A stretch of DNA of 64,000 nucleotides from Anthoceros angustus (taxonomy: Eukaryota > Plantae > Anthocerotophyta), in assembly GCA_010909165.1 (NCBI GenBank), contig MU008194.1, forward strand, positions 248,001 to 312,000. The letters run 5' to 3'. Below the pieces are notes generated by a model. That model ran no database searches. It saw only the letters and a program-made list of their open reading frames with translations, and was not told the origin of the DNA. This document shows, in pieces, positions 20,470-33,393 of the stretch (position 1 is the stretch's first letter; every line of letters starts with the position of its first letter). The translations under genes and the position numbers were made by a program.

Positions 20470-22400
20470 TCAAAGCCGCAACACAGCAGAGGCGAGCACG
20501 TTGCCACAGGTCGTCCCCATATCAGCAACTTGCCTCCACGGCAGGAATTGAGGAGTGCACACGTCCCTGCACCTGAGACTGCTGCACACCTCCACCGTGT
20601 TCAACGTCTGGATGTGGTAGCGGTTCCGGTTCTGCCATGACTCCTTTGTCCCTCCTATGATGTAGATTTCCCCATCCAAACTCACGCATGCAAATCCGAA
20701 ACGAGAGACGGGCCTGTTGTACACGTCTCCACCTGAGACATGTCCAACATGCATCCAGCAGTTTGAGTCGTGGTCGTACGCCATTATCCTGCTGTAGTGA
20801 ATGAAGATGAGCCTTCCATCAACGACGGTGCTTGGTCCTGGCACCTGCAGTTGAAGAGGCAGCTTGAGATTGTCAGATGCACGCATCGACCCTTCATGCA
20901 GAAACAGCAAACGTTACAGAGTATGAGAAGCACTACCTTGTGACAGTCCAGCCACATCTCATTCACAACCCTCCATGTGTCGGACTGCGGATCATAAACT
21001 TCAGCCGAGCCTTTTCGAGGGCGGTCTTCATACTGGTTTCTCATGTATTCTCCTGCAACAACCCAAAACTGCCCATCGAGAGCAACTCCGCTGGAGCTAG
21101 ACCTAATGAAGTGCATGCTCCTGATGGGACGCCAAGCGTCCTCAGCAGAGTCGTAAACCTCCGCAGAGTTAAGAAAAGAATTCACTCCCCGACCACCAGC
21201 AACGTACACCTTGTCCCCAATCACCGTGGCTGCAAACCAGCTGCGTGCAGTGTTCATACTTGCCGCTGTTGACCACCTATTTGTGTGGGCATTGTAGACT
21301 TTCACATCGGAAGAGACAATGACTGCAATGGTCAAGCAACCTATAAGAGAGGTTTCTGCTGGAGCACAGCAGGCATCTTACTACTGCGAAAAGAATTCAA
21401 TCCATTCTAAGCCTGGACAGCCATACCGTCGGTCCACTGCTGAGAGGAGTGATGGTGAGCGCAATGAATCCCTCCCATGAAATAAAGGCAACATCCCAAT
21501 GCCACACAAACAAATCCTTGGCAACAAAGACCTGGAGAGTGGCCTGGTATTGGGGGAAGGTTATGCCATTTGTTAGCTGTTGGATCAAAAACTCTGAAAG
21601 GCGATCCAGCAGGTGTCTCCGCAAGTACATATATCCACCCTTCAGACGATTCCACCTGTCAGAGATATCAACAATGTACAGGGATGTAAGCCACATATAG
21701 ACGGTCTATGTTTCCAGGTTGATTGGGAGTTAGCAGCAATCATAAAATGTCTCCAAGCCACTATGTCAACAGCAACAAATATGCACGAAAGGAACTTTCA
21801 CAGGGCTGTAAGCCATAGATATGAGAAAATGCGTAAGAGCAAAGTTTTCACCTGCTGCCGGAGGGAAGGAAAATCTGCGGCCTTGACCATATCCCTCCAT
21901 GACTTGCAAACCAGGGACAAGGTAGGCATCATGCCTCGGGCTACCCGGGCCAGACACCGAATGGCAACATCGTTTGGCAGGCCAGGCATAAGCTGCATAG
22001 CTGTTGCTGTTGCAGAGCCATTTGGGTCTTCGTTGCTTTTCTCACTATGAGAAGCTTGTCCCTGATCTTCTGTACAACCCGCCAGGACATCCTTTTCAGT
22101 TAGAGCCCCCACATGAGACACCAACTGAAGACTGATAGCTCCCATGCCTTCAGGCTTCATCAACTTCTCATCCGTTTCTGGAACTTGTACTCCCCAAACA
22201 CAAGTTCTACTGTCTTCCATATGTGCCTCTGCTGCAACAGGGCATGTCTCAAGGTGGCTCACTGGCGGGTTTTGTAGTTGCTGATCACTCATTCCCTCGG
22301 GATTACTGCCAGCTCCTATTTGACCAGCTAACATGGAACCCAGGTCCGTGTTCATGTCCGTATCCCCAGACCCCTCCCCTCTCTCCATTTTGACCTCCAT
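20470..22400 (-). CDS. F-box/kelch-repeat protein
   Basis: F-box LMPGLPNDVAIRCLARV...SLVCKSW; kelch repeats (ARSWFAATVIGDKVYVAGG...SAEVYD; FACVSLDGEIYIIGG) over 4 exons. Confidence 0.92.
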
Positions 22401-24928
22401 CACTTTGATGGTTCAGCCCTGATGAAGGGTTCACTCAACAGCCCCCTGATATTAACGCTCTTCCCAAAGAAAGGCCTTCGCACACAGGCAAGTCCAAGGA
22501 ACCGGGATCAGAGAAACGGGACAAACCACTGGGCACACACTCCCTTCAATGGCCCCACTACTTGAGCATCCCCACAGACACATGTATAGAGATTCCACAG
22601 ACACCCTCGACAAGAAAAATCATGCTGCAAAGAATCTCTTCCTCACAGATCAAACCATCAAAAAATGTTAACTCTGTGCCAGCAGCACAACAAGCGTATC
22701 GTGCATCCGTGAACCTATCCCACAATTGGGTTTCCGAATGCAAGACGGAATGTTCCCGGATCGTCAATCCCTAAAAACACAACCAGTCAAAGCAAATTTT
22801 CCACTGCGTCCCACTCGTGTCAGTTTGACTCCAAACCTCGGAATTTGCACCACATCCTCTACATACAAACAACGCCCATGAAGCATCAAGCCCCGAAGCA
22901 ACACTTCGCAAGTCACAGGCTTCCACTCCTCTCCCCATCCATCCGGACCATGGCACGGGATCCTTCCATCCACAGCCAGCATGATGTGATGGGCCCTCCA
23001 GACACCAAACCTCACTCACGACACACAGAAGTGCTGGATCTGCCGTATGCCGTAGATGATGGATCACGTCAACGAGATGTCGCCCACAATGTGTTCTCAC
23101 ATTCCACGGTCCAGGCCTTCCAGCAAGCCCGGCCCATCCGGGGAAGGGGCTAGGATTGCATAGCCTCTGATGCACCATGGCTGCATTGCTTGCCATCTGG
23201 CCAGACTTTTCTTCCAAATTCCATAGTAGAGATATCTCCTTTTCATCTATAAAAAGCCAGGGAGGCCAAGCTTTCACTACTCGACCTTTCTTTCTTTCTC
23301 CGGCGGACGGTTCGTCAGCCGAGCTCCGTCCTTGAGGTTAAGCGGTCGAGTGTCCTTGTCCCTGGTTCTCTGCGTGGTTATCGGACCCACGCTTGTTCAT
23401 AGCCCAGAACTGTACGCTCCCGGCGCAAACTAGGGTTTCCCGCGGCATGTGATGTTTGCACTAGGCTCGGCTGAGAGACTGTTGGGTGGTTTGATTTGTG
23501 TTTGATTTGTTTGTGTCCCATGCTTGCTCCAACAACTGAAGTTGTCTGATGCTTGGCACGTCAAGAGCTTGTGCTGCTTGCACAGTCTTCGTGGAAATCA
23601 AGGTTCGTTTGGACACCCTCTGTCCTGTCCGGTGTAGTCTACGTGTGCCTGCGATGGCTGTAGGTCTGATGTTGGCTTCGGTCCTGAGCATGGGTTGAGG
23701 GAGCTGCCTGGATTGAGGGTCGTAGCTTTTGTATCCAGTAGCCGTGATCTCCAAGGAGGAAACTATCATGAGCTCCATCTGATACCTCAAGGGTGCTGAT
23801 GACTCAAATGACACAGGATTTCTGAGGAACTTTAGTGTTAGGTCATACGCACATGTACATATTGTCCATCATTGAAGGGAAGAGTAGAGAAGCAGCGTCT
23901 GCCATGGCGTTTCTCTTTAGTTACCCTTCGCAGAGAAAGTTCAGGCACCGTAACTGGTGTGTGAGGTCTCTTTTCCAAACCGGTCATAAAAAGGGTTTCC
24001 TTATGTGTGGCCAGTGTCAAATAGGGACTACACGATGCATCCATTCGCACACTCGTTCGTTTTTCTCAAACACTTTGTGCTAGGTCTGAACGCTTGAACA
24101 TATTACGCCTCCTGCTTCCCATAGCAGGCACCTCGCCTTGGGAGACGAAGCCGAGAAAGTCCTTGGGTTTACTCGGGGCTCCTGTTAGGTAGAGGTGTAT
24201 TGTTACAACAATGTGGTTCAACCATAGCTTCCCGAGTTCATCATCCGCAGAATGTGGGACCAAAACTGAAGAGACCGGTGGTGAAAGAGGGTAGGCCAGC
24301 AAAGCAGGTACAACGTGGAGTGAGGGTTGATGCGGGTCTGCCTCAATGTGGAAGGCAAGGCGCGGTTTGCCTCCCGCTATCTCCCCACCCCCTTTCTATC
24401 TCTCCTCCTCCCGGGGCTCCTGCCGCTCCTGCCCTCACTCCCGGCTCGTATGACAAGTGTGAATGCCAAGACTGTCGGGATGGAAACAATCTCTTTGTCA
24501 CTCTCCATAACAAGCTCCTTCTCCTGCAGCCGTGGCATCCATGCCACCCATCCTCCTGCAGCCTTGGCACGCATGCCACCTATGGATAGCGATTGTGGGG
24601 CTGGGTTGCCTGCAGGTGTGAAGTTTTAGTCACACCCTGCAGCAAGCAGGGCAGAGCTGCCGACGGTGTCTGCTAAGGGCCAAGGCGCCACACGCGGAAG
24701 GGGCAATATGTGGGTAACAGGAGGCGGGAAACCGCGCTGTGGATGCGTGGCAGATTGGCTGGCACGGATGCACCTGTGGGATCCTCCTAGGGTTGCAATG
24801 ATGGAGGATGCCATGGACTCTAAATGCATCATCTCAGTGACTGCGAGTTAGGAGGATTCCCTACACGGAAGATTGTCTCGACTCTTGTGCCGGAACAATT
24901 TTTTTCTGCAGCTGCTACTGGGTCAGCC

Positions 24929-27900
24929 ATGGATACACTGGCAGACAGGGGGGATTGCAGGCAGGGGCCATGCAGATCCCGGTCATCCAGCAACCCCAGA
25001 GAGTCCAAACGGCGGTCTCACCCGCATTTTCACCTGGCTGCAACGCAATCCATGAAGTTGGAGGGCTGGACGTCAGCTGCGGAGTCTATGCCACACGTCC
25101 CCGGGGCACCGCCGACGGGGGTGAATTGGAACAGTGGGAGCGGGGGCGGTGCCTGGATCAAGGCTCCCTCTGTCGCAGTGCCTCCGGTGGATTATTATGG
25201 CTACAGCAATGACGACGCGGAATCCAACTCGCCAAGGGGAAGAGGAGCCCAACATGTTGCCAAGAAGTTGGTCTTGGCGAGCAGAGACAAGGAGTCGTTA
25301 TTGGAGGAAATCATTGATCTGAAGAAAGCCCTGTCGGAGCAGGCACAGCACCTTAAGCTCCACAAGGTTCACTCATGCAGCGTCGAATTGGAAAACAGGT
25401 ATGTTCTCCTTGGCTCCCTTTGAATGAGAGTCCCTCGACCTGCAGCCAGCCTCGAAATCCACTGCCAAGTCAGATAACAGTCAGATCTCAGTTGTTTACC
25501 CCAGCAGCATTCTTCGTTCATCCACAGCACCATACTCTACCATTCGTCCTCATCATTTCGTCTGCTACCGTTGGAGCATTTGACTCTGTGTTATCTCTGA
25601 AGCAATACAACTTGCTTTATTCGACTCGTGCGCCTCTGTAACCTTAAATGTGAACCCCTTTCTGTAGAAGGGATCTCGTACCCATTGCTCCTGTTTCGAA
25701 GGGTGTCTTCGCCGTCTGGCCCAGCAGGGTCTGCTCTTGCTAGTTGGCAAGCGCAGACTTGCCATCTTGCCTGGGAATCACAGCGTTGCCCTGTGAGAAG
25801 ACAAAGAACTTCCAGTGCAGTCCCCATGGGACTGAGGACATCTCTTTCCAAGAGACCGAAAACGTATCTTCAAATCTAAGCCTCTCTGCATGTTGTTGAA
25901 ACCTCCCTCCCCTGCAGTCGGTGCCAAGCAAGTTCAGCAAAGGCTGGAGGGTGTGCTCCAGAAATCAGATATTCAAAGTAGGTCATCTTGTCGTGAAGTA
26001 TGCATTCAAATTATGCTGCGAATGCACCACAGGAAGTTGGAAAAGGATGTTGAGGATTTGGAGCTGGCGGGCAGTGGAGATGGTCCACGAACCGGTGGTT
26101 CAACTCGGTTGCGAGCTAAAATTCAAGGTTGGTCACACCCACAAACTACAAACCATCCTAGATTTGTGTCCTTCACATTACTCGCAAAATTTCTATCATA
26201 AGCTATAGTTGAAACAAAAAGCGTGAAATGTCTTGTTAGGCCTCAAGACAAGATGTGGGGATTTGCAATCGACATGTGATGCCCAACATGAAGAAATTGC
26301 TCTATTACGTCGTGACATTCGAGTTACACGAACTAGGGTGAGGATATGATTTTTTATGTGGATTAAAACATAAATGTGTAATATTCTCTCGTGTTCAAAT
26401 GGATTTTATACACCAGGAAATTGAAGTGGAGAGGGATGTTTTTGCTGGAGAAATTTCAAGACTGCAGAAGCTCATCAAAAGAATGAAAGGCTTGCATAAT
26501 CGTATTAGCTGTGAAAATCGGGAGCTTGGTCGTTTGAAAGATAAATCATGTCGTTTGGAAATGGCAAATGCACGACTGGAAAGTTGTATTTCTGTATGAT
26601 TCTGCGCTTTCACAGTTCCTTACTCTCTTTAGAAATTAAACATAATACTTCAATTTTCTAATGTTATATTTGTTTTGTTTGAAGGTTGTACATAAAACTT
26701 TAGAGAGGGCTAATAGAGAAGTAACCCAACACCGACATAAAGCAAATGAATCAGCTCTACAAGCTAAGAGGCATGCTAAACGTTGTAAAGAATTAGAGGA
26801 TCATGCAACCCTTTTGGAAGGCCTTTTAGAACAAGAGAGAATAGAAAAAAGAAAGCTACAAAAAAGGATCCATGACTTGGAGGAGGAGCTTGCGAAATTA
26901 GCTCATGAAAAGGAGACAAGACCCAATTCCAGATCTGACCTTAGGAGCAGAGGAGGACCTGTTGGAGAATCTTGGGGCTTCGGAGATGATAAAGGCGGAG
27001 GCTGGGACCATGATAGTGATAAGCACCACCATAGGAAACATAAAAAACACCATGGACATGAAGGTGGAGGTGGTTTGTTTTCTGGATTCTTTGGTGGCGG
27101 TGGTGGCAGTGGGGGTAGTGGTGGTGGGCGGGGTGGTGGCGGTGGGAGTGGGGGTGGCGGGAGTGGTGGAGTTGGAGGAGGTGGAGTTAAAGCCGAAACA
27201 GATGCAGCGGAACGTTTACCTCAAGGAAAGCAACCTGGGCATGGCGTAGATACCCCTCCTAAGGGCCATCCTCCAGGGCCTGGAGCTGGAGGGGGAGCAG
27301 TAGCAGCTTCAAAAGGAGCTGCAATAGCCAAAAAAGAAGTCGTAGTTCCAAAGTTAAATCTAGATGGACTCGAGGGTAAAGCTGAAGGGTTGATGTTTGA
27401 TAAAGACTCAAAACCTATTACTTTGCATGATAAGCATCAAAGAGGCTTTTTCGATAAGGAGCATAAGGAAATGGTGTACGACAAGGATAAACCTATCCCT
27501 AAGGATAAGGAGGGCAAGCCACTCTTTGATAAACGAGGTAATTCAATTTTCTATGATAAAAAAGGAGCAATCATTAAAACAAATAAAGAAGGGAACCCAT
27601 TATTCGATAAAGATGGAAGACCATTGTTTGACAAGAGTGGTAATCCTATTACCTATGACAAAGATGGAAATATCGTGCCAGCCAAAAAAGATGTTAAGGA
27701 TACAAAGACTAAGGATATTAAGATTACCCCGGGAGATATGGATGATAAATTTGCGAAAGATGCTGCGCCTATTCCCTTGCATGATAAGAGTGCTAGACCA
27801 TTGTTTGATGATGATCACAAACCTATAACATATGATAATCAAAATAAGCCTATACCCAGAGATAAGAATGGGAACCTATTGTACAATAAGAATGGATCTG

Positions 27901-29624
27901 CTGTATACTATGACAAAAATGGGAAAAGAATACCAACTGATGAGCAAGGTAGACCATTATTTGATGAATATGGTAGACCATTATTTGATAAAGACGGAAA
28001 TCCAATATACTACGATAAAGATGGCAATATTGTCGATAAATTTGGTCGTCCGCTCTTTGACAAAGATGGCAATCCAATTTATTATGATAAAGATGGTAAC
28101 AGAGTTGATAAAGATGGCAATAGACTTGATAAAGATGGTAATAGACTTGATAAAGATGGTAATAGACTTGATAAAGGTAGTAACCTACTTGACAAAGATG
28201 GTAAGTTATTGAGTAAAGGTGCAAAGGGCAAGGGCCCAGCAGAAGGTTATGATGAGTGGGGCAATAAGCTTGGTAGTCCCGAAGCTGAAAGGAGAAGGCT
28301 AGAAGAATTGGCAAAAGAGAAAAATAAATATCATATTACTGTCAATGATACTAATATTGACACTAATGAGTTTGAACTTGAAAAAGATAAAGATGGAAAT
28401 GTTTCCATAGATATATCACTAAAAAGTCCTCCAGGAGAACCAGAAGACTTAATCTTATCACCTCACGAGCTTCAACTTTTGGCACAACACAAAGAAGTTG
28501 CCAAAAGCACAGAGACCCTCATAGGAAAACATTTAGAAATCAAGGATGATACTAAGGAGATATTACATGATATAGATGAAACACATCATGCAAAATTGGA
28601 CCATGAACAAGAAGAGGTCCTAGATAAACAAATGAACGTAGCAAAGACTATGGAAGATATATTAGAAAAACATAAGGATGTAGCTAAGGCTATTGAAAAA
28701 GAAATAACAAGCCAAGAAGTTAAAGCAGCACTTAGAGCATCTAGGTCAGAGGGAGGAGAACATAGTGGACACGGGAAAAAAGTCAGCATAAAAGATCCAA
28801 GTGCTGAGGGTGGTGATGGATCCGGAAAGAGTGGAAAGCGCCGATCCTCAAGGAAAAGTAGTAGCAAATATGGTATCCATGCAAGTGAAAGTTCGGATGA
28901 AGAGGGAGGACAGAGTGCCAAATCTGGAAGGAAATCGATAGCTGGGACAGGGACTGGAGGTGATCCACACAGAAAAACCAGCAGGGTTGGAGGGGCTGGA
29001 CAAGACTCTGATCCCTTTGCTCGAGGAAAAGCAAGGGCAGGACAAGGAAAATCAACAGAAGAAGATGATAAGTTTGCACATGATACTAGACAAAGGATAT
29101 CAGTGCGAGAAGACATGGCACCTGAAAGGTTGGGTGGCCATGGTGAGGAGTATTTGGATCTACCTGCTACTGTGGAGTCTGTTGATGATGTCAAAAAAGC
29201 ATTTGGAGGGAAAATGGAGCGCCATTCATTTGATCATCATGCCCATGATCTTGCAAGTGTACATGATGATGTCAAAGACGTGCTGCATTCTGCATTGGAT
29301 TCAGTTCGAGGGCATGGAGAACAAGAAGGCCATGGTGGTACAAGTGGTGGTGGTCATGGTAGTTCAGATGATCCAAGTGGGTCTGGTGGGACAGGAGGGT
29401 CTAGTAGCCACGAGGGTGGCTCATCCGGTGGTGGTAGTGGTCGTAAAAAGCCATTTGGTGGAGCAGGTGTTCTACAACTTGGTCTCATAAAGGAAAACAT
29501 GAAAGAAGTTCTAGAGCACTTAGATAATATCAAGGGAGTATTGGTCCACAGAAAAGATGAGCCACATGAAGATGATAAACATGATGGTCAACATAAACAT
29601 GATGAACCCCCACATTCATCTTAA
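24929..29624 (+). CDS. IQCE-like coiled-coil protein with a ~980-aa last exon (Gly-rich, DKDG repeats, acidic/His-rich tail); start may lie upstream
   Basis: Phase-consistent exons ~24929-25398, 26033-26127, 26240-26337, 26417-26593, 26685-29624. RDKESLLEEIIDLKKAL and IQGLKTRCGDLQSTC...EISRLQKLI align without gaps to the human IQCE coiled coil as recalled. Confidence 0.75.
27399..28211 (+). repeat. Coding repeat array of about 29 D(K)xG(N/R/K)P(L/I)(F/Y)-like units of 7-10 aa, including six 21-nt units at 28086-28211
   Basis: Counted by eye from the translation; gataaagatggtaatagactt is repeated perfectly at 28128 and 28149. Confidence 0.9.
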
Positions 29625-31305
29625 GAGCAAGAAGTTAGGGATCTAAAATCCTGCAAACTATATTGAGCCATTAATCTATTAATAGCTCATTAGTTGATAG
29701 AAAGTGGCTGTTGAATATTTGTCATCTAAGAAATGACCTTACATGAACATGATATGCAAAAGCTCTTTTGAGCATTGATACATCTTGAATGGTGCCTCAT
29801 TTTACCAGCTTACAGCTTGCTCATGCAAGTTTTCATTAAGGGAGCTTGGTCTCCCATATTTATCCTATAGTTATGAGGTTCACCTTCATAATTATGTCCT
29901 ACTTTTTGTGACATATTCTGAATAAGAACCAACAACATCTTAAAAGAAATCACTTTTGTAGAAGAGGAGGATCTCAAACATTTTTAGAAGAAGTCTCAAA
30001 CATTTTTGGAGCTTCTCCCTGATTACATGTCAAAAACATGACTTGTTATTTTTTGGCTCATAATTTTGCTCTCGTAGTTAGAGATTTAATGAGCAAAGCG
30101 AAAAACAATTAGTTTTCATCTAAGAAATTTTAAACTCTATTTTTTTATAGTACTATGAAAGAATTATTTATTAACCATATCCAGAGCTAGGTGCTTGTAT
30201 TTAGTCAATTATGTAATTTTGAGAAGAATATTATTTAAGTTTTTTAATTATTTTTTTGCACCATTTCAAAGAAAATTTAGATGTACCTACGTATTAAAGA
30301 AATAAGAATTTCAAACTTGAGCATGAAACCATTAACAATCATTTTCAAAGATTTCACACTAGTGACAACTACAAGAAACTTGTGCACCTCATCACTAGAG
30401 GGCCATGACTAAAATATAATATATGAATAAATAATGAATAATTAATAAAAATAATATAAAATTTTATATTAATAATAATCTCAATTAGCATGCTCATATA
30501 TATTTTCCTTATTGTGAACCACTGATACACGAATGGAACACTAGATCCGAGTAGATATAATAAATTTTCAAAAGAAGAATTCTTGCTCCCCATTTTATGA
30601 TGAAGTATTTTCTTTGATTTCATGTATTGGTAGCTTTTGTCTACTATGAGGCTTGAGCAAATGAGTCTGATTTTTTTTTTAATTTGCTATTTTGAAAAAT
30701 AAATCAAAACAACCTCGAAGGAAAAATCTTCGGCTAGGGTTTTGATTCCCCTATGTTACATATCGTATTATCGCATTAAAAAGAGACGGTCCTCTTCTCA
30801 AGGTCATATGAATACGTGCCTAGATACCATCACATGAGTCTGATATCAAATTTTTAACATTTGTGTTCAATATCTATCCTACCGACTTCTATCCATCTGA
30901 ACCCTCTTCAATACATCCCAATTTATAACACAGCATCAAGTGAGTATAATCATGTATGAACATTCTTGAAGAAATTATCCTACATAGTCATAACGGTATT
31001 TAAACTATTTAAATAAAATTAAACATCCAAGCTCATAATTGTGAGAAAAATTTGGAGCAAAAAGCCTTGCAACCTTATAGCCATGCTAGCTTCGAGAAGA
31101 GGTACAGGCCTTAGTTTTTGTAAGAGGTAAGTCTCCTACTTCAGCATAATCCTGGACTGAAATGTATTTTCAAGGGGTATGTTAAAAAGTAGCTTGTTAA
31201 AAGGGCAATGCTTCCTCTTGTTCCGGGTCATTGTCTAGATGTCCGCGGGACGATCGGGAGAGATTCACTGGTGGGATATCTTTTTATATGATCGAGATTT
31301 CCATT

Positions 31306-33393
31306 CTACACATCTTCCTTTTCCTTCTCAGACAATGGCTTCAACACCAACTTTGTTTGTGGTACATGGCCCCCTTCTTCCTTCAGACGTTCATTCATGC
31401 TCTCAGCCTTGAATGAAATATCATGTCTCTTGTCTCCCACCACAAATGTATGTACCTGCTTCTTCACCTCAATCCCCGCCACTAAAGGTTTCTTGTTAGC
31501 TCCTGCTACCTTTCTCTGTGTTTCAATCCTCTCTACATCAGACCACATACCCACATCCGCGTAGACACTGGCCATGAGCACATATGCAGATTGATGCCAT
31601 GATGTTCAACCATGGAATCAAAGAGCTTGCGACCCTCACCAACCAGTCCCTCATGACTGCATGCTACTAGAAGGCAAGTAAATGTAGTAGCATCAGGCTG
31701 AACACCATCGACTAACATCTCCTCAAAACAAGCTAGGGCATTGTGACCTTCATCACAAGAACCACACCCGGCTATCAGGGCCGTCCATGTCACCACATCC
31801 TTTGTAGCCAGACTGTCAAACACCTGGCGTGCATCTTCCAGTTGGCCACTTGCATACTTGTCCACCAGGCAGGAGCCCAACAGTACGTTATCCAGCTGCC
31901 CTCTTTCCACAATGTGAGAGTGCAGCTGCTTGCCCTTCTGTAAGACACCAGTGCTTGCACAGGCCTTCAGAAGACAAGCAAGAGTAACATGGTCAGGTAA
32001 GACTAGGCCCTCCTTTTCCGTTTGTCCATACAGAACCAGCGCCTCCTGGCCGAGACCTTGCTGTGCATACCCAGCAATCAGGGCACTCCATGTCACCAGA
32101 TCCTTTGTGGCCAAGCTGTCAAAGACCTTGCGTGCATCTTCCAGTTAGCCACATTAAGCATACATGTCAACCAGGCAGGGGCCCACCAGCACATTGTCTA
32201 GATGTCCTCTTTCCACAATCTGCGATTGCAGCTGCCTTCCCTTCTGTAAGGTGCCAGCACTTGCACAGGCCTTCAGAAGGCAAGCAAACGTAACCTAGTT
32301 GGCCACAAGCAGGCCCTCTTGCTCCTTTTGTCCATACAGAACAAGCGCCTCCTGGTCAAGAACTTGCTGTGCATCCCCAGCAATCAGGGCCGTCCATGTC
32401 ACCACATCCTTTGTCGCCAAGCTGTCAAAAACCCGGCATGCATCTTCCATTTGGCCACATTTTGCATACATGTCCACCAGGTAGGTGCCCAAGAGCACGT
32501 TATCTACCTTTCCTCGTTCCACAATCTGCAAGTGAAGTTGCCTGCCCGTGTGCAAGGCACCAGTGCTCGCACAGGCCTTTAGAAGGCAAGCAAAGGCAAC
32601 CTGGTCAGCCACACGCAGGCCCCTCCTGCTCCATCTGTCCATGTAGCACTATCGCCTCTTGACCGAGTCCTTGCTGTGGATACCCAGCGATCAAGGCATT
32701 TACATCAGCACATCCTTGGTGGCCAAGCTGTCAAAAACCTGGCGTGCATCGTCCAGTTGGCCACATTTTGCATAGATGTCCACCAGGCAGGTGCCAACAA
32801 ACAGGTCAGGAGTAATTCCACTGGCAACACATCCCAGAGCACCTTTCTGCCAGATTCCAAGTCGCCGGCAAATGCACAAGCTTGCAAGGCAGCTATAAAG
32901 ACGTGAGCATCCGGATGCCTTCACACCTGAGCCCTGCATCTCATGGTACTGTCGTATAGCATCGTGAGTTTTCCCATGTTTAGCATGGGCGGAGATTATA
33001 GAGGACCACATAAAGGCATCCGGGTTTCCCCACCCTGGTCAACACATCCATGGCCTCCTGCAACCTACCTCCACAAGCATGCATGCGCAAGATATGGTTC
33101 CCCAAATACGTGTTCGACTCGTACTCTAGTTTGACAGTGAGAAGACGAACTCGTCGCCGAACAACCATATCCTTCTTAGCTGCACACAGCTTCAGCACAT
33201 TATAAAACACATACTGTGAAATAGGACAGTCTGTGAGCGCCAGCAATTCCAGGGCTCCAACAGCCTCAACAAGCTTCCCCTGTTGACATAAGGTGCTCAC
33301 GGTTGCAGCCGTTACGCGCATTTCAAATTCTGCAGGTCTGCTAGTGGAAGGACCAGGCATGTGCATATCCAACGAGCCCAGCTGCTCATCCAC
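31306..33393 (-). pseudogene. PLS-class PPR gene with E/E+ region, frameshifted and truncated before the DYW catalytic motif
   Basis: Repeated KDVVTWTALIAG..QQG / ACLLKACASTG / LVDMYAKCGQ triplets, then KKPLVAGIEVKKQVHTFVVGD...VPQTKLVLKPLSEKEKEDV followed by a stop. Several frameshifts. Confidence 0.85.

What the first reader, a model, noticed from the sequence alone, without database searches (positions are those of the whole stretch)
24929..29624. IQCE-like putative ciliary protein in a land plant, with IQ motifs apparently replaced by a giant DKDG-repeat tail
Seen: a clean 5-exon gene whose coiled coil gives two ungapped blocks (RDKESLLEEIIDLKKALSEQ; IQGLKTRCGDLQSTC...EISRLQKLI). These match my recollection of human IQCE (REKEDMYDEIIELKKSLHVQ; INGLKQRILKLEQQC...EVHRLQTLL). 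Established: animal IQCE sits at the cilium base with EFCAB7/EVC, and non-seed plants have flagellated sperm. Seen: no IQxxxRG motif, but ~980 aa of Gly-rich, DKDG-repeat and acidic/His-rich sequence. Inference: a sperm basal-body or flagellar scaffold with an architecture I do not recognise as described.
Basis: partly seen in the sequence, partly recalled or inferred. Interest (0 to 1): 0.75.

Follow-up and report, generated by a model that had tools for sequence, protein, structure and literature searches.

The report
IQ-less IQCE relative in a plant
This land-plant gene encodes a long coiled-coil protein whose front part is truly related to animal IQCE, a protein that anchors signalling proteins at the base of cilia. 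Its family occurs in plants with swimming sperm and in no seed plant among the named hits, so an "animal" cilium-base part is much older than papers state.

Summary
A 5-exon, all GT-AG gene (24929-29624, + strand, about 1259 aa) encodes an N-terminal coiled coil and a roughly 900-aa repetitive tail with no IQ motif.

The IQCE link also holds.
- A fern orthologue searched against 1.84 billion proteins gave only 48 hits. These were flagellate streptophytes plus animal IQCE (best E 2e-7). The only other named hits were one ciliate and one cryptophyte, both weak. No other animal protein was named.
- A plant-versus-animal profile comparison gave probability 98.9%, E 2e-17. Reversed and block-shuffled controls scored 21-42 against 147.
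- Named hits are Chara, liverworts, mosses, Selaginella and a fern. No seed plant appears.

The family is "Group-75" of Koshimizu et al. 2021: specific to spermatozoid-producing plants, enriched in antheridia, uncharacterised, and treated there as lacking animal relatives.

No non-animal member has IQ motifs. The D-K-x-G array (22 units) was found only in this genome's copy; liverwort orthologues carry other repeats between the same three conserved tail motifs. So "IQ replaced by DKDG" is not the right history.

Most likely it is a sperm flagellar-base or basal-apparatus scaffold. That role is inferred, not shown.

I did not search the joined spliced protein. I searched exon by exon and used natural orthologues as stand-ins. 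The scan has not noted this on other DNA.

The parts
24929..25398 (+). Exon 1. N-terminal region with a K-L-E-x-W motif at about 25052, followed by the first IQCE-homologous coiled-coil block. The start codon is uncertain (24824, 24929 or 25052).
   Evidence: Donor site is CAG|gtatgt. 49% identity to the Riccia long orthologue.
25283..25342 (+). Block R-D-K-E-S...K-K-A-L-S-E-Q. This is the best single match to the animal IQCE profile (HMM positions 144-165).
   Evidence: 10.9 bits for this exon alone
26033..26127 (+). Exon 2. Coiled-coil segment K-L-E-K-D...A-K-I-Q.
   Evidence: 68-71% identity to liverwort long orthologues
26240..26337 (+). Exon 3. G-L-K-T-R...T-R-T-R, matching IQCE profile positions 219-247.
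   Evidence: 72-75% identity to liverwort orthologues
26417..26593 (+). Exon 4. E-I-E-V-E-R-D...R-L-Q-K-L-I..., matching IQCE profile positions 250-304.
26685..29624 (+). Exon 5 (979 codons plus stop). It contains the end of the coiled coil and the whole tail.
26685..26930 (+). Last coiled-coil segment, conserved with liverworts (66% identity over 62 aa).
26952..27329 (+). His/Lys patch followed by a Gly-rich low-complexity segment.
27345..27362 (+). Conserved short motif V-P-K-L-N-L, shared with liverwort long orthologues and ferns.
27396..28214 (+). D(K/E)xG(N/R/K) repeat array. 22 strict units with a 7-9 aa period, in two blocks, plus degenerate units. Found in no other family member checked.
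   Evidence: AF2 models have low confidence.
28085..28204 (+). 21-nt tandem array (5.7 copies, 87% matches) encoding D-K-D-G-N-R-L heptads. Its high copy identity suggests a recent expansion.
28290..28442 (+). Conserved tail island ending G-N-V-S-I-D-I-S-L-K, which aligns to G-R-L-S-x-x-I-N-L-K in liverworts.
28452..29459 (+). Acidic, His, Ser and Gly-rich tail, predicted to be disordered. Not conserved.
29472..29552 (+). Conserved C-terminal motif I-K-E-N-x-K-x-V-L-x-H-L-x-N-I, shared with liverwort long orthologues.

Best explanation
The gene encodes a member of a streptophyte protein family whose N-terminal coiled coil, of about 170-250 aa, is homologous to the N-terminal coiled coil of metazoan IQCE. 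IQCE is the scaffold that, together with EFCAB7, holds EVC-EVC2 at the EvC zone just above the ciliary transition zone.

The plant proteins have no IQ motifs. In this copy and its long liverwort orthologues, the module is followed by a roughly 900-aa tail. That tail evolves fast and is repetitive, but it keeps three short motifs in fixed order: V-P-K-L-N-L, G-(R/N)-(L/V)-S..I.L-K, and a C-terminal I-K-E-N..V-L.H-L.N-I. In this genome the filler between the first two motifs has become an array of D-K-x-G-x-P-h-aromatic units.

Shown here:
- the gene structure
- orthology to the liverwort and fern genes
- statistically robust homology to IQCE
- restriction of named family members to organisms with cilia or flagella

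Taken from the literature: antheridium-enriched expression of all Marchantia and Physcomitrium members.

Inferred: the coiled coil oligomerises and docks at the flagellar base or basal-body apparatus of developing spermatozoids. The conserved tail motifs recruit partners. The repeats act as a spacer or a multivalent element.
For: Gene model and orthology.

Homology to IQCE:
- phmmer of fern orthologue P0009 against 1.84e9 proteins gave only 48 hits. These included IQCE of fish, lamprey, amphioxus, reptile and mammals, all carrying Pfam IQ motifs.
- hhalign of 12 plant against 6 animal sequences gave probability 98.9, E 2.3e-17, 169 columns at 28% identity.
- Reversed and 7-column block-shuffled controls scored 21-42 against 147.
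- An animal HMM scored the fern protein at 42.7 bits and family member P0101 (organism not given) at 44.1 bits.
- The window's E1, E3 and E4 hit the animal HMM in the same order as the model, colinearly.

Phyletic pattern: Chara, Marchantia, Riccia, Calypogeia, Physcomitrium, Ceratodon, Selaginella and Adiantum. No seed plant appears.

Literature: Koshimizu et al. 2021 (bioRxiv 10.1101/2021.07.25.453666), Table S1, Group-75. It has the same Marchantia, Chara and Selaginella genes plus Ginkgo Gb_29134. Antheridium TPM exceeds vegetative TPM for all eight bryophyte members.

IQCE role: PMC10413113.

Conserved tail motifs.
Against: - There is no expression, splicing or localisation data for this species.
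- Each window exon alone matches the IQCE profile only weakly. The long liverwort orthologues alone score only about 22 bits against the animal HMM, so the link for this particular gene rests on family membership.
- Coiled coils are prone to spurious similarity; the plant profile also hits tropomyosin and other coiled coils in the PDB at up to 33 bits, in a different region.
- Plants have no Hedgehog pathway. Homologues of EVC, EVC2 and EFCAB7 were not looked for in this genome.
- No intron position is exactly shared with amphioxus IQCE.
- No Chlamydomonas member is known. The published pipeline excluded families with Chlamydomonas members, and this family was retained.
Confidence: 0.65

Rival explanations
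1. The protein is sperm-specific but does not act at the ciliary base. The family would instead work in another feature of plant spermiogenesis, such as the spline or multilayered structure, nuclear elongation, or removal of cytoplasm. Its homology to IQCE would reflect only a shared ancient coiled-coil module.
For: Antheridium enrichment and the phyletic pattern fit any structure specific to spermatozoids. The family is retained in Chara and land plants but was not found in Chlamydomonas by the published pipeline. Animal partners (EVC, EVC2, Hedgehog signalling) are absent from or unknown in plants.
Against: The only characterised homologue is a ciliary-base scaffold. Loss of the family tracks loss of flagella.
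Confidence: 0.22
2. The resemblance to IQCE is convergent coiled-coil similarity rather than common descent.
For: The region is a heptad-rich coiled coil. Individual exon scores are low. The plant profile gives generic coiled-coil hits in the PDB. No intron position is shared.
Against: Among 1.84e9 proteins, IQCE is the only animal family among the named hits. hhalign gave E 2.3e-17, and reversed and block-shuffled controls scored at most 42 against 147. Non-heptad landmarks are conserved in the same order: G-L-K, a Cys after Q-x-x, and D-x-R-x-T...E...R-L-Q.
Confidence: 0.05
3. This copy is decaying, or its tail is functionless filler. The DKDG array would then be replication-slippage junk in a gene that is no longer needed.
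For: The tandem 21-nt copies are 87-94% identical, which suggests recent slippage. The tail is not conserved apart from short islands. AF2 confidence is low.
Against: A 2940-nt exon remains open. All splice sites are intact. Three tail motifs and the C-terminal motif are kept in order across the divergence from liverworts.
Confidence: 0.06
4. The DKDG array was acquired from bacteria. Its best database matches are bacterial TrbI/VirB10-type proteins.
For: P0001-P0004 and P0006 match the array at E 1e-11 to 5e-45 and carry 10-23 units of the same type.
Against: The similarity is confined to a short, simple repeat, so E-values are inflated by repetition. No TrbI domain is present. The array sits in frame between conserved plant motifs. 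A related single unit exists in the conserved island just downstream, which offers a local origin.
Confidence: 0.02

Closest known systems
Metazoan IQCE (IQ domain-containing protein E), the EvC-zone scaffold of primary cilia
   Same: The N-terminal coiled-coil module is homologous over about 170 aligned columns at 28% identity, with landmark blocks in the same order. Both are found in organisms with cilia. Both have a long, low-complexity, partly acidic C-terminal half.
   Different: No non-animal member checked has IQ motifs, whereas amphioxus has four. The tail is unrelated. Plants lack Hedgehog signalling. Binding to EFCAB7, EVC or EVC2 is untested. Intron positions are not shared.
Streptophyte 'Group-75' of Koshimizu et al. 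2021 (Mapoly0023s0053, Mapoly0031s0069, Mapoly0031s0154, Mapoly0139s0023, the Physcomitrium Pp3c genes, Chara g36891, Ginkgo Gb_29134)
   Same: It is the same family. The Marchantia, Chara and Selaginella members are hits of the same search. It is restricted to plants that produce spermatozoids.
   Different: That paper treated the group as lacking animal relatives (IQCE BLAST E 0.35 and 0.002) and left it uncharacterised. This copy belongs to the long subtype, with tail motifs and a D-K-x-G array found in no other family member checked here.
Long liverwort orthologues (Riccia sorocarpa R1sor_002384, Riccia fluitans R1flu_020658, and a Calypogeia fissa 1300-aa protein)
   Same: They share the five-exon structure, 45-75% identity per coiled-coil exon, and the same three tail motifs in the same order.
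   Different: Their tail repeats are different. Riccia has six L-T-P-E-Q-L-E-E-F-R-R-R-V-type units that hit DUF6374. Calypogeia has about ten S-G-L-T...G-I-P-L-T units. Neither has any D-K-x-G unit.
Bacterial TrbI/VirB10-type proteins with D-x-x-G-N-P repeats (P0001-P0004, P0006)
   Same: They share the same short repeat unit, probably a beta-hairpin turn.
   Different: The plant protein has no TrbI domain, and the bacterial proteins show no hit outside the repeat array. The similarity lies in the repeat only.

Membership tests
IQCE | The conserved N-terminal coiled-coil region (animal consensus K-E-K-E-D-M-Y-D-E-I-I-E-L-K-K ... N-G-L-K-Q-R-I-L-K-L-E-Q-Q-C ... Y-Y-E-E-V-Q-R-L) | tested here: met
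IQCE | One or more IQ calmodulin-binding motifs (Pfam PF00612) | tested here: not met
   There is no Pfam IQ hit and no IQxxxRGxxxR in the window exons or in any plant, Chara, ciliate or cryptophyte member. Animal members have 1-4.
IQCE | Binds EFCAB7 and localises to the EvC zone at the ciliary base | not testable with these tools
   This needs biochemistry or imaging. The role in animals is taken from PMC10413113.
IQCE | Occurs only in organisms with cilia | tested here: met
   All named hits come from flagellate streptophytes, animals, a ciliate or a cryptophyte. None comes from a seed plant. 15 short hits remain unnamed.
Streptophyte Group-75 (Koshimizu et al. 2021) | Sequence membership in the orthogroup | tested here: met
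   The window exons are 45-75% identical to long liverwort members. Group-75 genes from Marchantia, Chara and Selaginella are hits of the same search.
Streptophyte Group-75 (Koshimizu et al. 2021) | Expression enriched in antheridia | not testable with these tools
   This is reported for Marchantia and Physcomitrium members. No data are available for this species.
EF-hand / DxDxDG calcium-binding loops (considered for the D-K-D-G-N units) | A 12-residue loop with Gly at position 6 and Glu at position 12, flanked by helices | tested here: not met
   Pfam finds no EF-hand. In the repeat unit, position 6 is Pro, Arg or Ile, and there are no flanking helices.
TrbI/VirB10 | C-terminal TrbI domain (PF03743) | tested here: not met
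   Pfam finds no such domain in the window protein. The similarity is confined to the repeats.

The most novel reading that the evidence does not exclude
The IQCE coiled coil would be an ancient ciliary-base anchoring module, already present in the common ancestor of plants and animals. Plant sperm would use it without IQ motifs. In this lineage, the 22-unit D-K-D-G-N array, which copies the first five positions of a calmodulin-type EF-loop, would act as a built-in low-affinity calcium-binding region. It would stand in for the calmodulin/EFCAB7 calcium input that animal IQCE receives through its IQ motifs.
Probability: 0.08. Interest if true: 0.8.

Novelty: new variant of a known kind. Interest (0 to 1): 0.58.

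Why it matters
IQCE, and the EvC-zone complex it belongs to, are described as animal inventions tied to Hedgehog signalling. For example, bioRxiv 10.1101/153437 states that orthologues are absent from choanoflagellates and "emerged during animal evolution".

The plant family was short-listed as a plant-specific sperm gene family precisely because it seemed to have no animal relatives. Joining the two gives three things:
- It dates the IQCE coiled-coil module to before the plant-animal split.
- It gives an uncharacterised, antheridium-enriched plant family a concrete hypothesis that can be tested: anchoring at the flagellar base.
- It gives cilium biologists a system free of Hedgehog signalling in which to ask what the module binds.

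The tail repeats that differ between lineages, set between fixed motifs, are also a clear case of rapid turnover in a scaffold protein.

Tried and rejected
- Pfam on each exon and on the liverwort orthologues found no family for the coiled coil.
- The ESM Atlas look-alike search on the coiled-coil region returned only generic bacterial coiled-coil clusters.
- Alignment A1, with the fern protein as scaffold and exon fragments from the window, L001 and L002, was meant to give a profile of the coiled coil only. MAFFT stacked the fragments on each other, so I discarded it and used the single fern protein for the one large HMMER job.
- A reciprocal word-index search with the animal IQCE alignment was saturated by more than 1000 vertebrate IQCE entries. 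Only the best 120 are shown, so it says nothing about plants. I replaced it with a local hmmsearch scaled to Z = 1.84e9.
- Intron positions in plants and amphioxus IQCE are not exactly shared; the nearest offsets are 2-4 residues. This is neutral.
- AF2 of the repeat array had mean pLDDT 47 on its own and 51 with bacterial repeat proteins. It predicted short strand-turn units only, so I ran no fold search.
- The PDB holds no IQCE structure. The plant profile gave only generic coiled-coil hits, and exon 5 gave none.
- The paper by Pusapati et al. 2014 is not held in the library.
Full report
Observation.

The region holds a five-exon gene on the + strand: E1 24929-25398, E2 26033-26127, E3 26240-26337, E4 26417-26593 and E5 26685-29624. 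Every intron is GT-AG, and the exon lengths sum to 3780 nt, or 1259 codons plus a stop.

E5 is a single 2940-nt open exon. It starts with the last 80 aa or so of a coiled coil. It then runs through a His/Lys patch and a Gly-rich stretch, followed by an array of 22 strict D(K/E)xG(N/R/K) units with a period of 7-9 residues. The array includes a 21-nt tandem repeat at 28085-28204. An acidic, His, Ser and Gly-rich tail completes the exon.

No IQ motif is present. The start codon is uncertain. ATG codons at 24824, 24929 and 25052 are all in frame. Liverwort orthologues begin at the position that corresponds to 25052, while another family member (P0101) shows weak similarity further upstream.

Exons were searched one by one by reference, and naturally annotated orthologues served as stand-ins for the spliced product.

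Orthologues and gene model.

The large exon found two Riccia proteins. A second search, using the coiled-coil region of one of them, added a Calypogeia fissa protein and an Adiantum protein.

tblastn shows the same five-exon layout and junction residues in the Riccia sorocarpa and Calypogeia loci. This supports the splicing of E5 to the upstream exons. Exon by exon, the long liverwort proteins are the best or near-best matches, at 45-75% identity.

Outside the coiled coil, only three short islands are conserved, and they keep the same order. They are V-P-K-L-N-L (also present in ferns), a block ending G-(R/N)-(L/V)-S..I.L-K, and a C-terminal I-K-E-N..V-L.H-L.N-I motif.

The sequence between these islands differs by lineage. 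This genome has D-K-x-G units. Riccia has six L-T-P-E-Q-L-E-E-F-type units that hit DUF6374. Calypogeia has about ten S-G-L-T...G-I-P-L-T units. Adiantum has plain low-complexity sequence.

The IQCE question.

Pfam and the Atlas search left the coiled coil unexplained. I therefore ran the one exhaustive HMMER job, using the fern orthologue P0009.

Among 1.84 billion representative proteins, only 48 reached E <= 1e-3. Looked up by name, they fall into three groups:
- Flagellate streptophytes: Chara braunii, Marchantia, Riccia, Calypogeia, Physcomitrium, Ceratodon, many Selaginella paralogues, and ferns.
- Animal IQCE from fish, lamprey, amphioxus, an amphisbaenian and mammals. The best is at E 2.2e-7 over query residues 131-391, and all carry Pfam IQ motifs.
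- Two weak hits from a ciliate and a cryptophyte.

No other animal coiled-coil protein and no seed-plant protein was among the named hits.

A profile-profile comparison of 12 plant members against 6 non-human animal IQCE proteins gave probability 98.9% and E 2.3e-17 over 169 columns at 28% identity. Reversing either alignment gave scores of 24-27. Twenty-two shuffles of the animal alignment in 7-column blocks gave 21-42. The real alignment scored 147.

In the reverse direction, an HMM of the animal proteins scored a 523-aa family member (P0101, organism not given) at 44.1 bits and the fern protein at 42.7 bits. That is E about 1e-6 at the size of the large library. The long liverwort proteins scored only about 22 bits.

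The window's own E1, E3 and E4 match that HMM in the same order as the model, at positions 144-165, 219-247 and 250-304. Each match is weak on its own.

The homology is therefore well supported at the level of the family. For this particular gene it is inherited through clear orthology.

What is already known.

Table S1 of Koshimizu et al. 2021 (bioRxiv 10.1101/2021.07.25.453666) lists this family as Group-75. It holds four Marchantia genes, including Mapoly0023s0053 and Mapoly0031s0154, which are hits here. It also holds four Physcomitrium genes, Chara g36891 (a hit here), nine Selaginella genes and Ginkgo Gb_29134.

That group was selected for two reasons. It is confined to streptophytes that make spermatozoids, and all bryophyte members are more highly expressed in antheridia. 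For example, one gene has 0 TPM in vegetative tissue against 24.7 in antheridia, another 0.04 against 59.6, and another 1.9 against 41.8.

The best animal BLAST hits in that table were IQCE, at E 0.35 and 0.002. The pipeline counted these as no similarity. The group was set aside for later work because four paralogues would need to be knocked out.

Separately, a study of ciliary proteomes states that IQCE, EFCAB7, EVC and EVC2 have no choanoflagellate orthologues and arose in animals. I found no paper in the held library that links IQCE to plants.

Mechanism.

In animals, the EFCAB7-IQCE complex recruits EVC-EVC2 to the EvC zone, just distal to the transition zone.

Four lines of evidence point the same way: homology of the coiled coil, loss of the family wherever flagella were lost, retention in Ginkgo, and antheridium-biased expression. 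The most likely role is therefore a coiled-coil scaffold at the flagellar base or basal apparatus of developing sperm. The three conserved tail motifs would be partner-binding sites and the repeats a spacer or multivalent element. This step is inference.

A sperm-specific role away from the ciliary base is the main rival. Candidates are the spline or multilayered structure and nuclear shaping.

None of the non-animal members I checked has IQ motifs. IQ motifs were therefore either gained on the animal side or lost early in the plant lineage. The D-K-x-G array was found in no other member and is partly recent, so it did not replace them.

The repeat array.

Its best database matches are bacterial TrbI/VirB10-type proteins that carry the same unit. 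The similarity is confined to the repeat. A single related unit sits in the conserved island just downstream of the array, so local expansion is the simpler origin.

AF2 predicts regular two-residue strands separated by turns, but with low confidence: mean pLDDT 47 for the sequence alone and 51 with an alignment. No fold is claimed.

The unit begins like a calmodulin EF-loop, D-K-D-G-N. It lacks Gly at position 6 and has no flanking helices. Calcium binding is only an idea.

Context.

The neighbouring genes are an F-box/Kelch gene upstream and a PPR gene downstream, both on the - strand. This is normal for a plant nuclear genome.

Earlier notes of this scan on the same genome, which I did not check, report axonemal dynein and docking-complex genes and a DYW:KP editing domain, and call the genome hornwort-like. 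That agrees with a flagellate non-seed plant.

Verdict.

The IQCE reading is supported. Functional placement at the flagellar base remains a well-grounded inference. The finding is an IQ-less variant of a known ciliary scaffold, in a plant family that was already flagged but whose link to IQCE was not recognised.

Noticed in passing
window 20470-22403 (- strand): ORFs with Kelch repeats (20787-21335) and an F-box (21801-22403). Probably one F-box/Kelch gene upstream of the finding.
   Followed up: partly
window 31533-32114 (- strand): An ORF with PPR repeats (E 4e-24), just downstream of the gene.
   Followed up: partly
window 24001-32000: GC falls from 0.54 (24-26 kb, covering exons 1-2) to 0.37-0.41 (26-32 kb). 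Exon 5 shows strong positive GC skew and AT skew, meaning the coding strand is purine-rich. This probably reflects Lys/Asp/Gly/Glu codon usage.
   Followed up: no
L001:1529-1657 and P0007 / P0005: The annotated Riccia models look slightly wrong. The R. sorocarpa genome encodes R-L-R-S-K-L-Q-G at the end of exon 2, which the model skips. The R. fluitans model lacks the end of exon 1 and all of exon 2.
   Followed up: partly
P0007, P0005 (Riccia) and P0008 (Calypogeia) tails: Each liverwort orthologue has its own tandem peptide repeats at the same place in the tail. The Riccia unit hits Pfam DUF6374 (E 8e-9), a family of unknown function.
   Followed up: partly
P0001-P0004, P0006 (metagenome proteins): Bacterial TrbI/VirB10-type proteins carry 10-23 D-x-x-G-N-P units like those in the plant tail. 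This repeat type seems not to have a Pfam model; the Bflower family matches only weakly.
   Followed up: partly
P0051 (Euplotes, 1418 aa) and P0056 (Hanusia phi, 360 aa): Weak hits to the family from a ciliate (high compositional bias) and a cryptophyte. If real, they would date the module to early eukaryotes.
   Followed up: no
Selaginella hits (P0014, P0018, P0020, P0021, P0025, P0028-P0030 and members of their clusters): Selaginella moellendorffii has an unusually large set of paralogues: nine gene IDs in the published group, and many clusters here.
   Followed up: no
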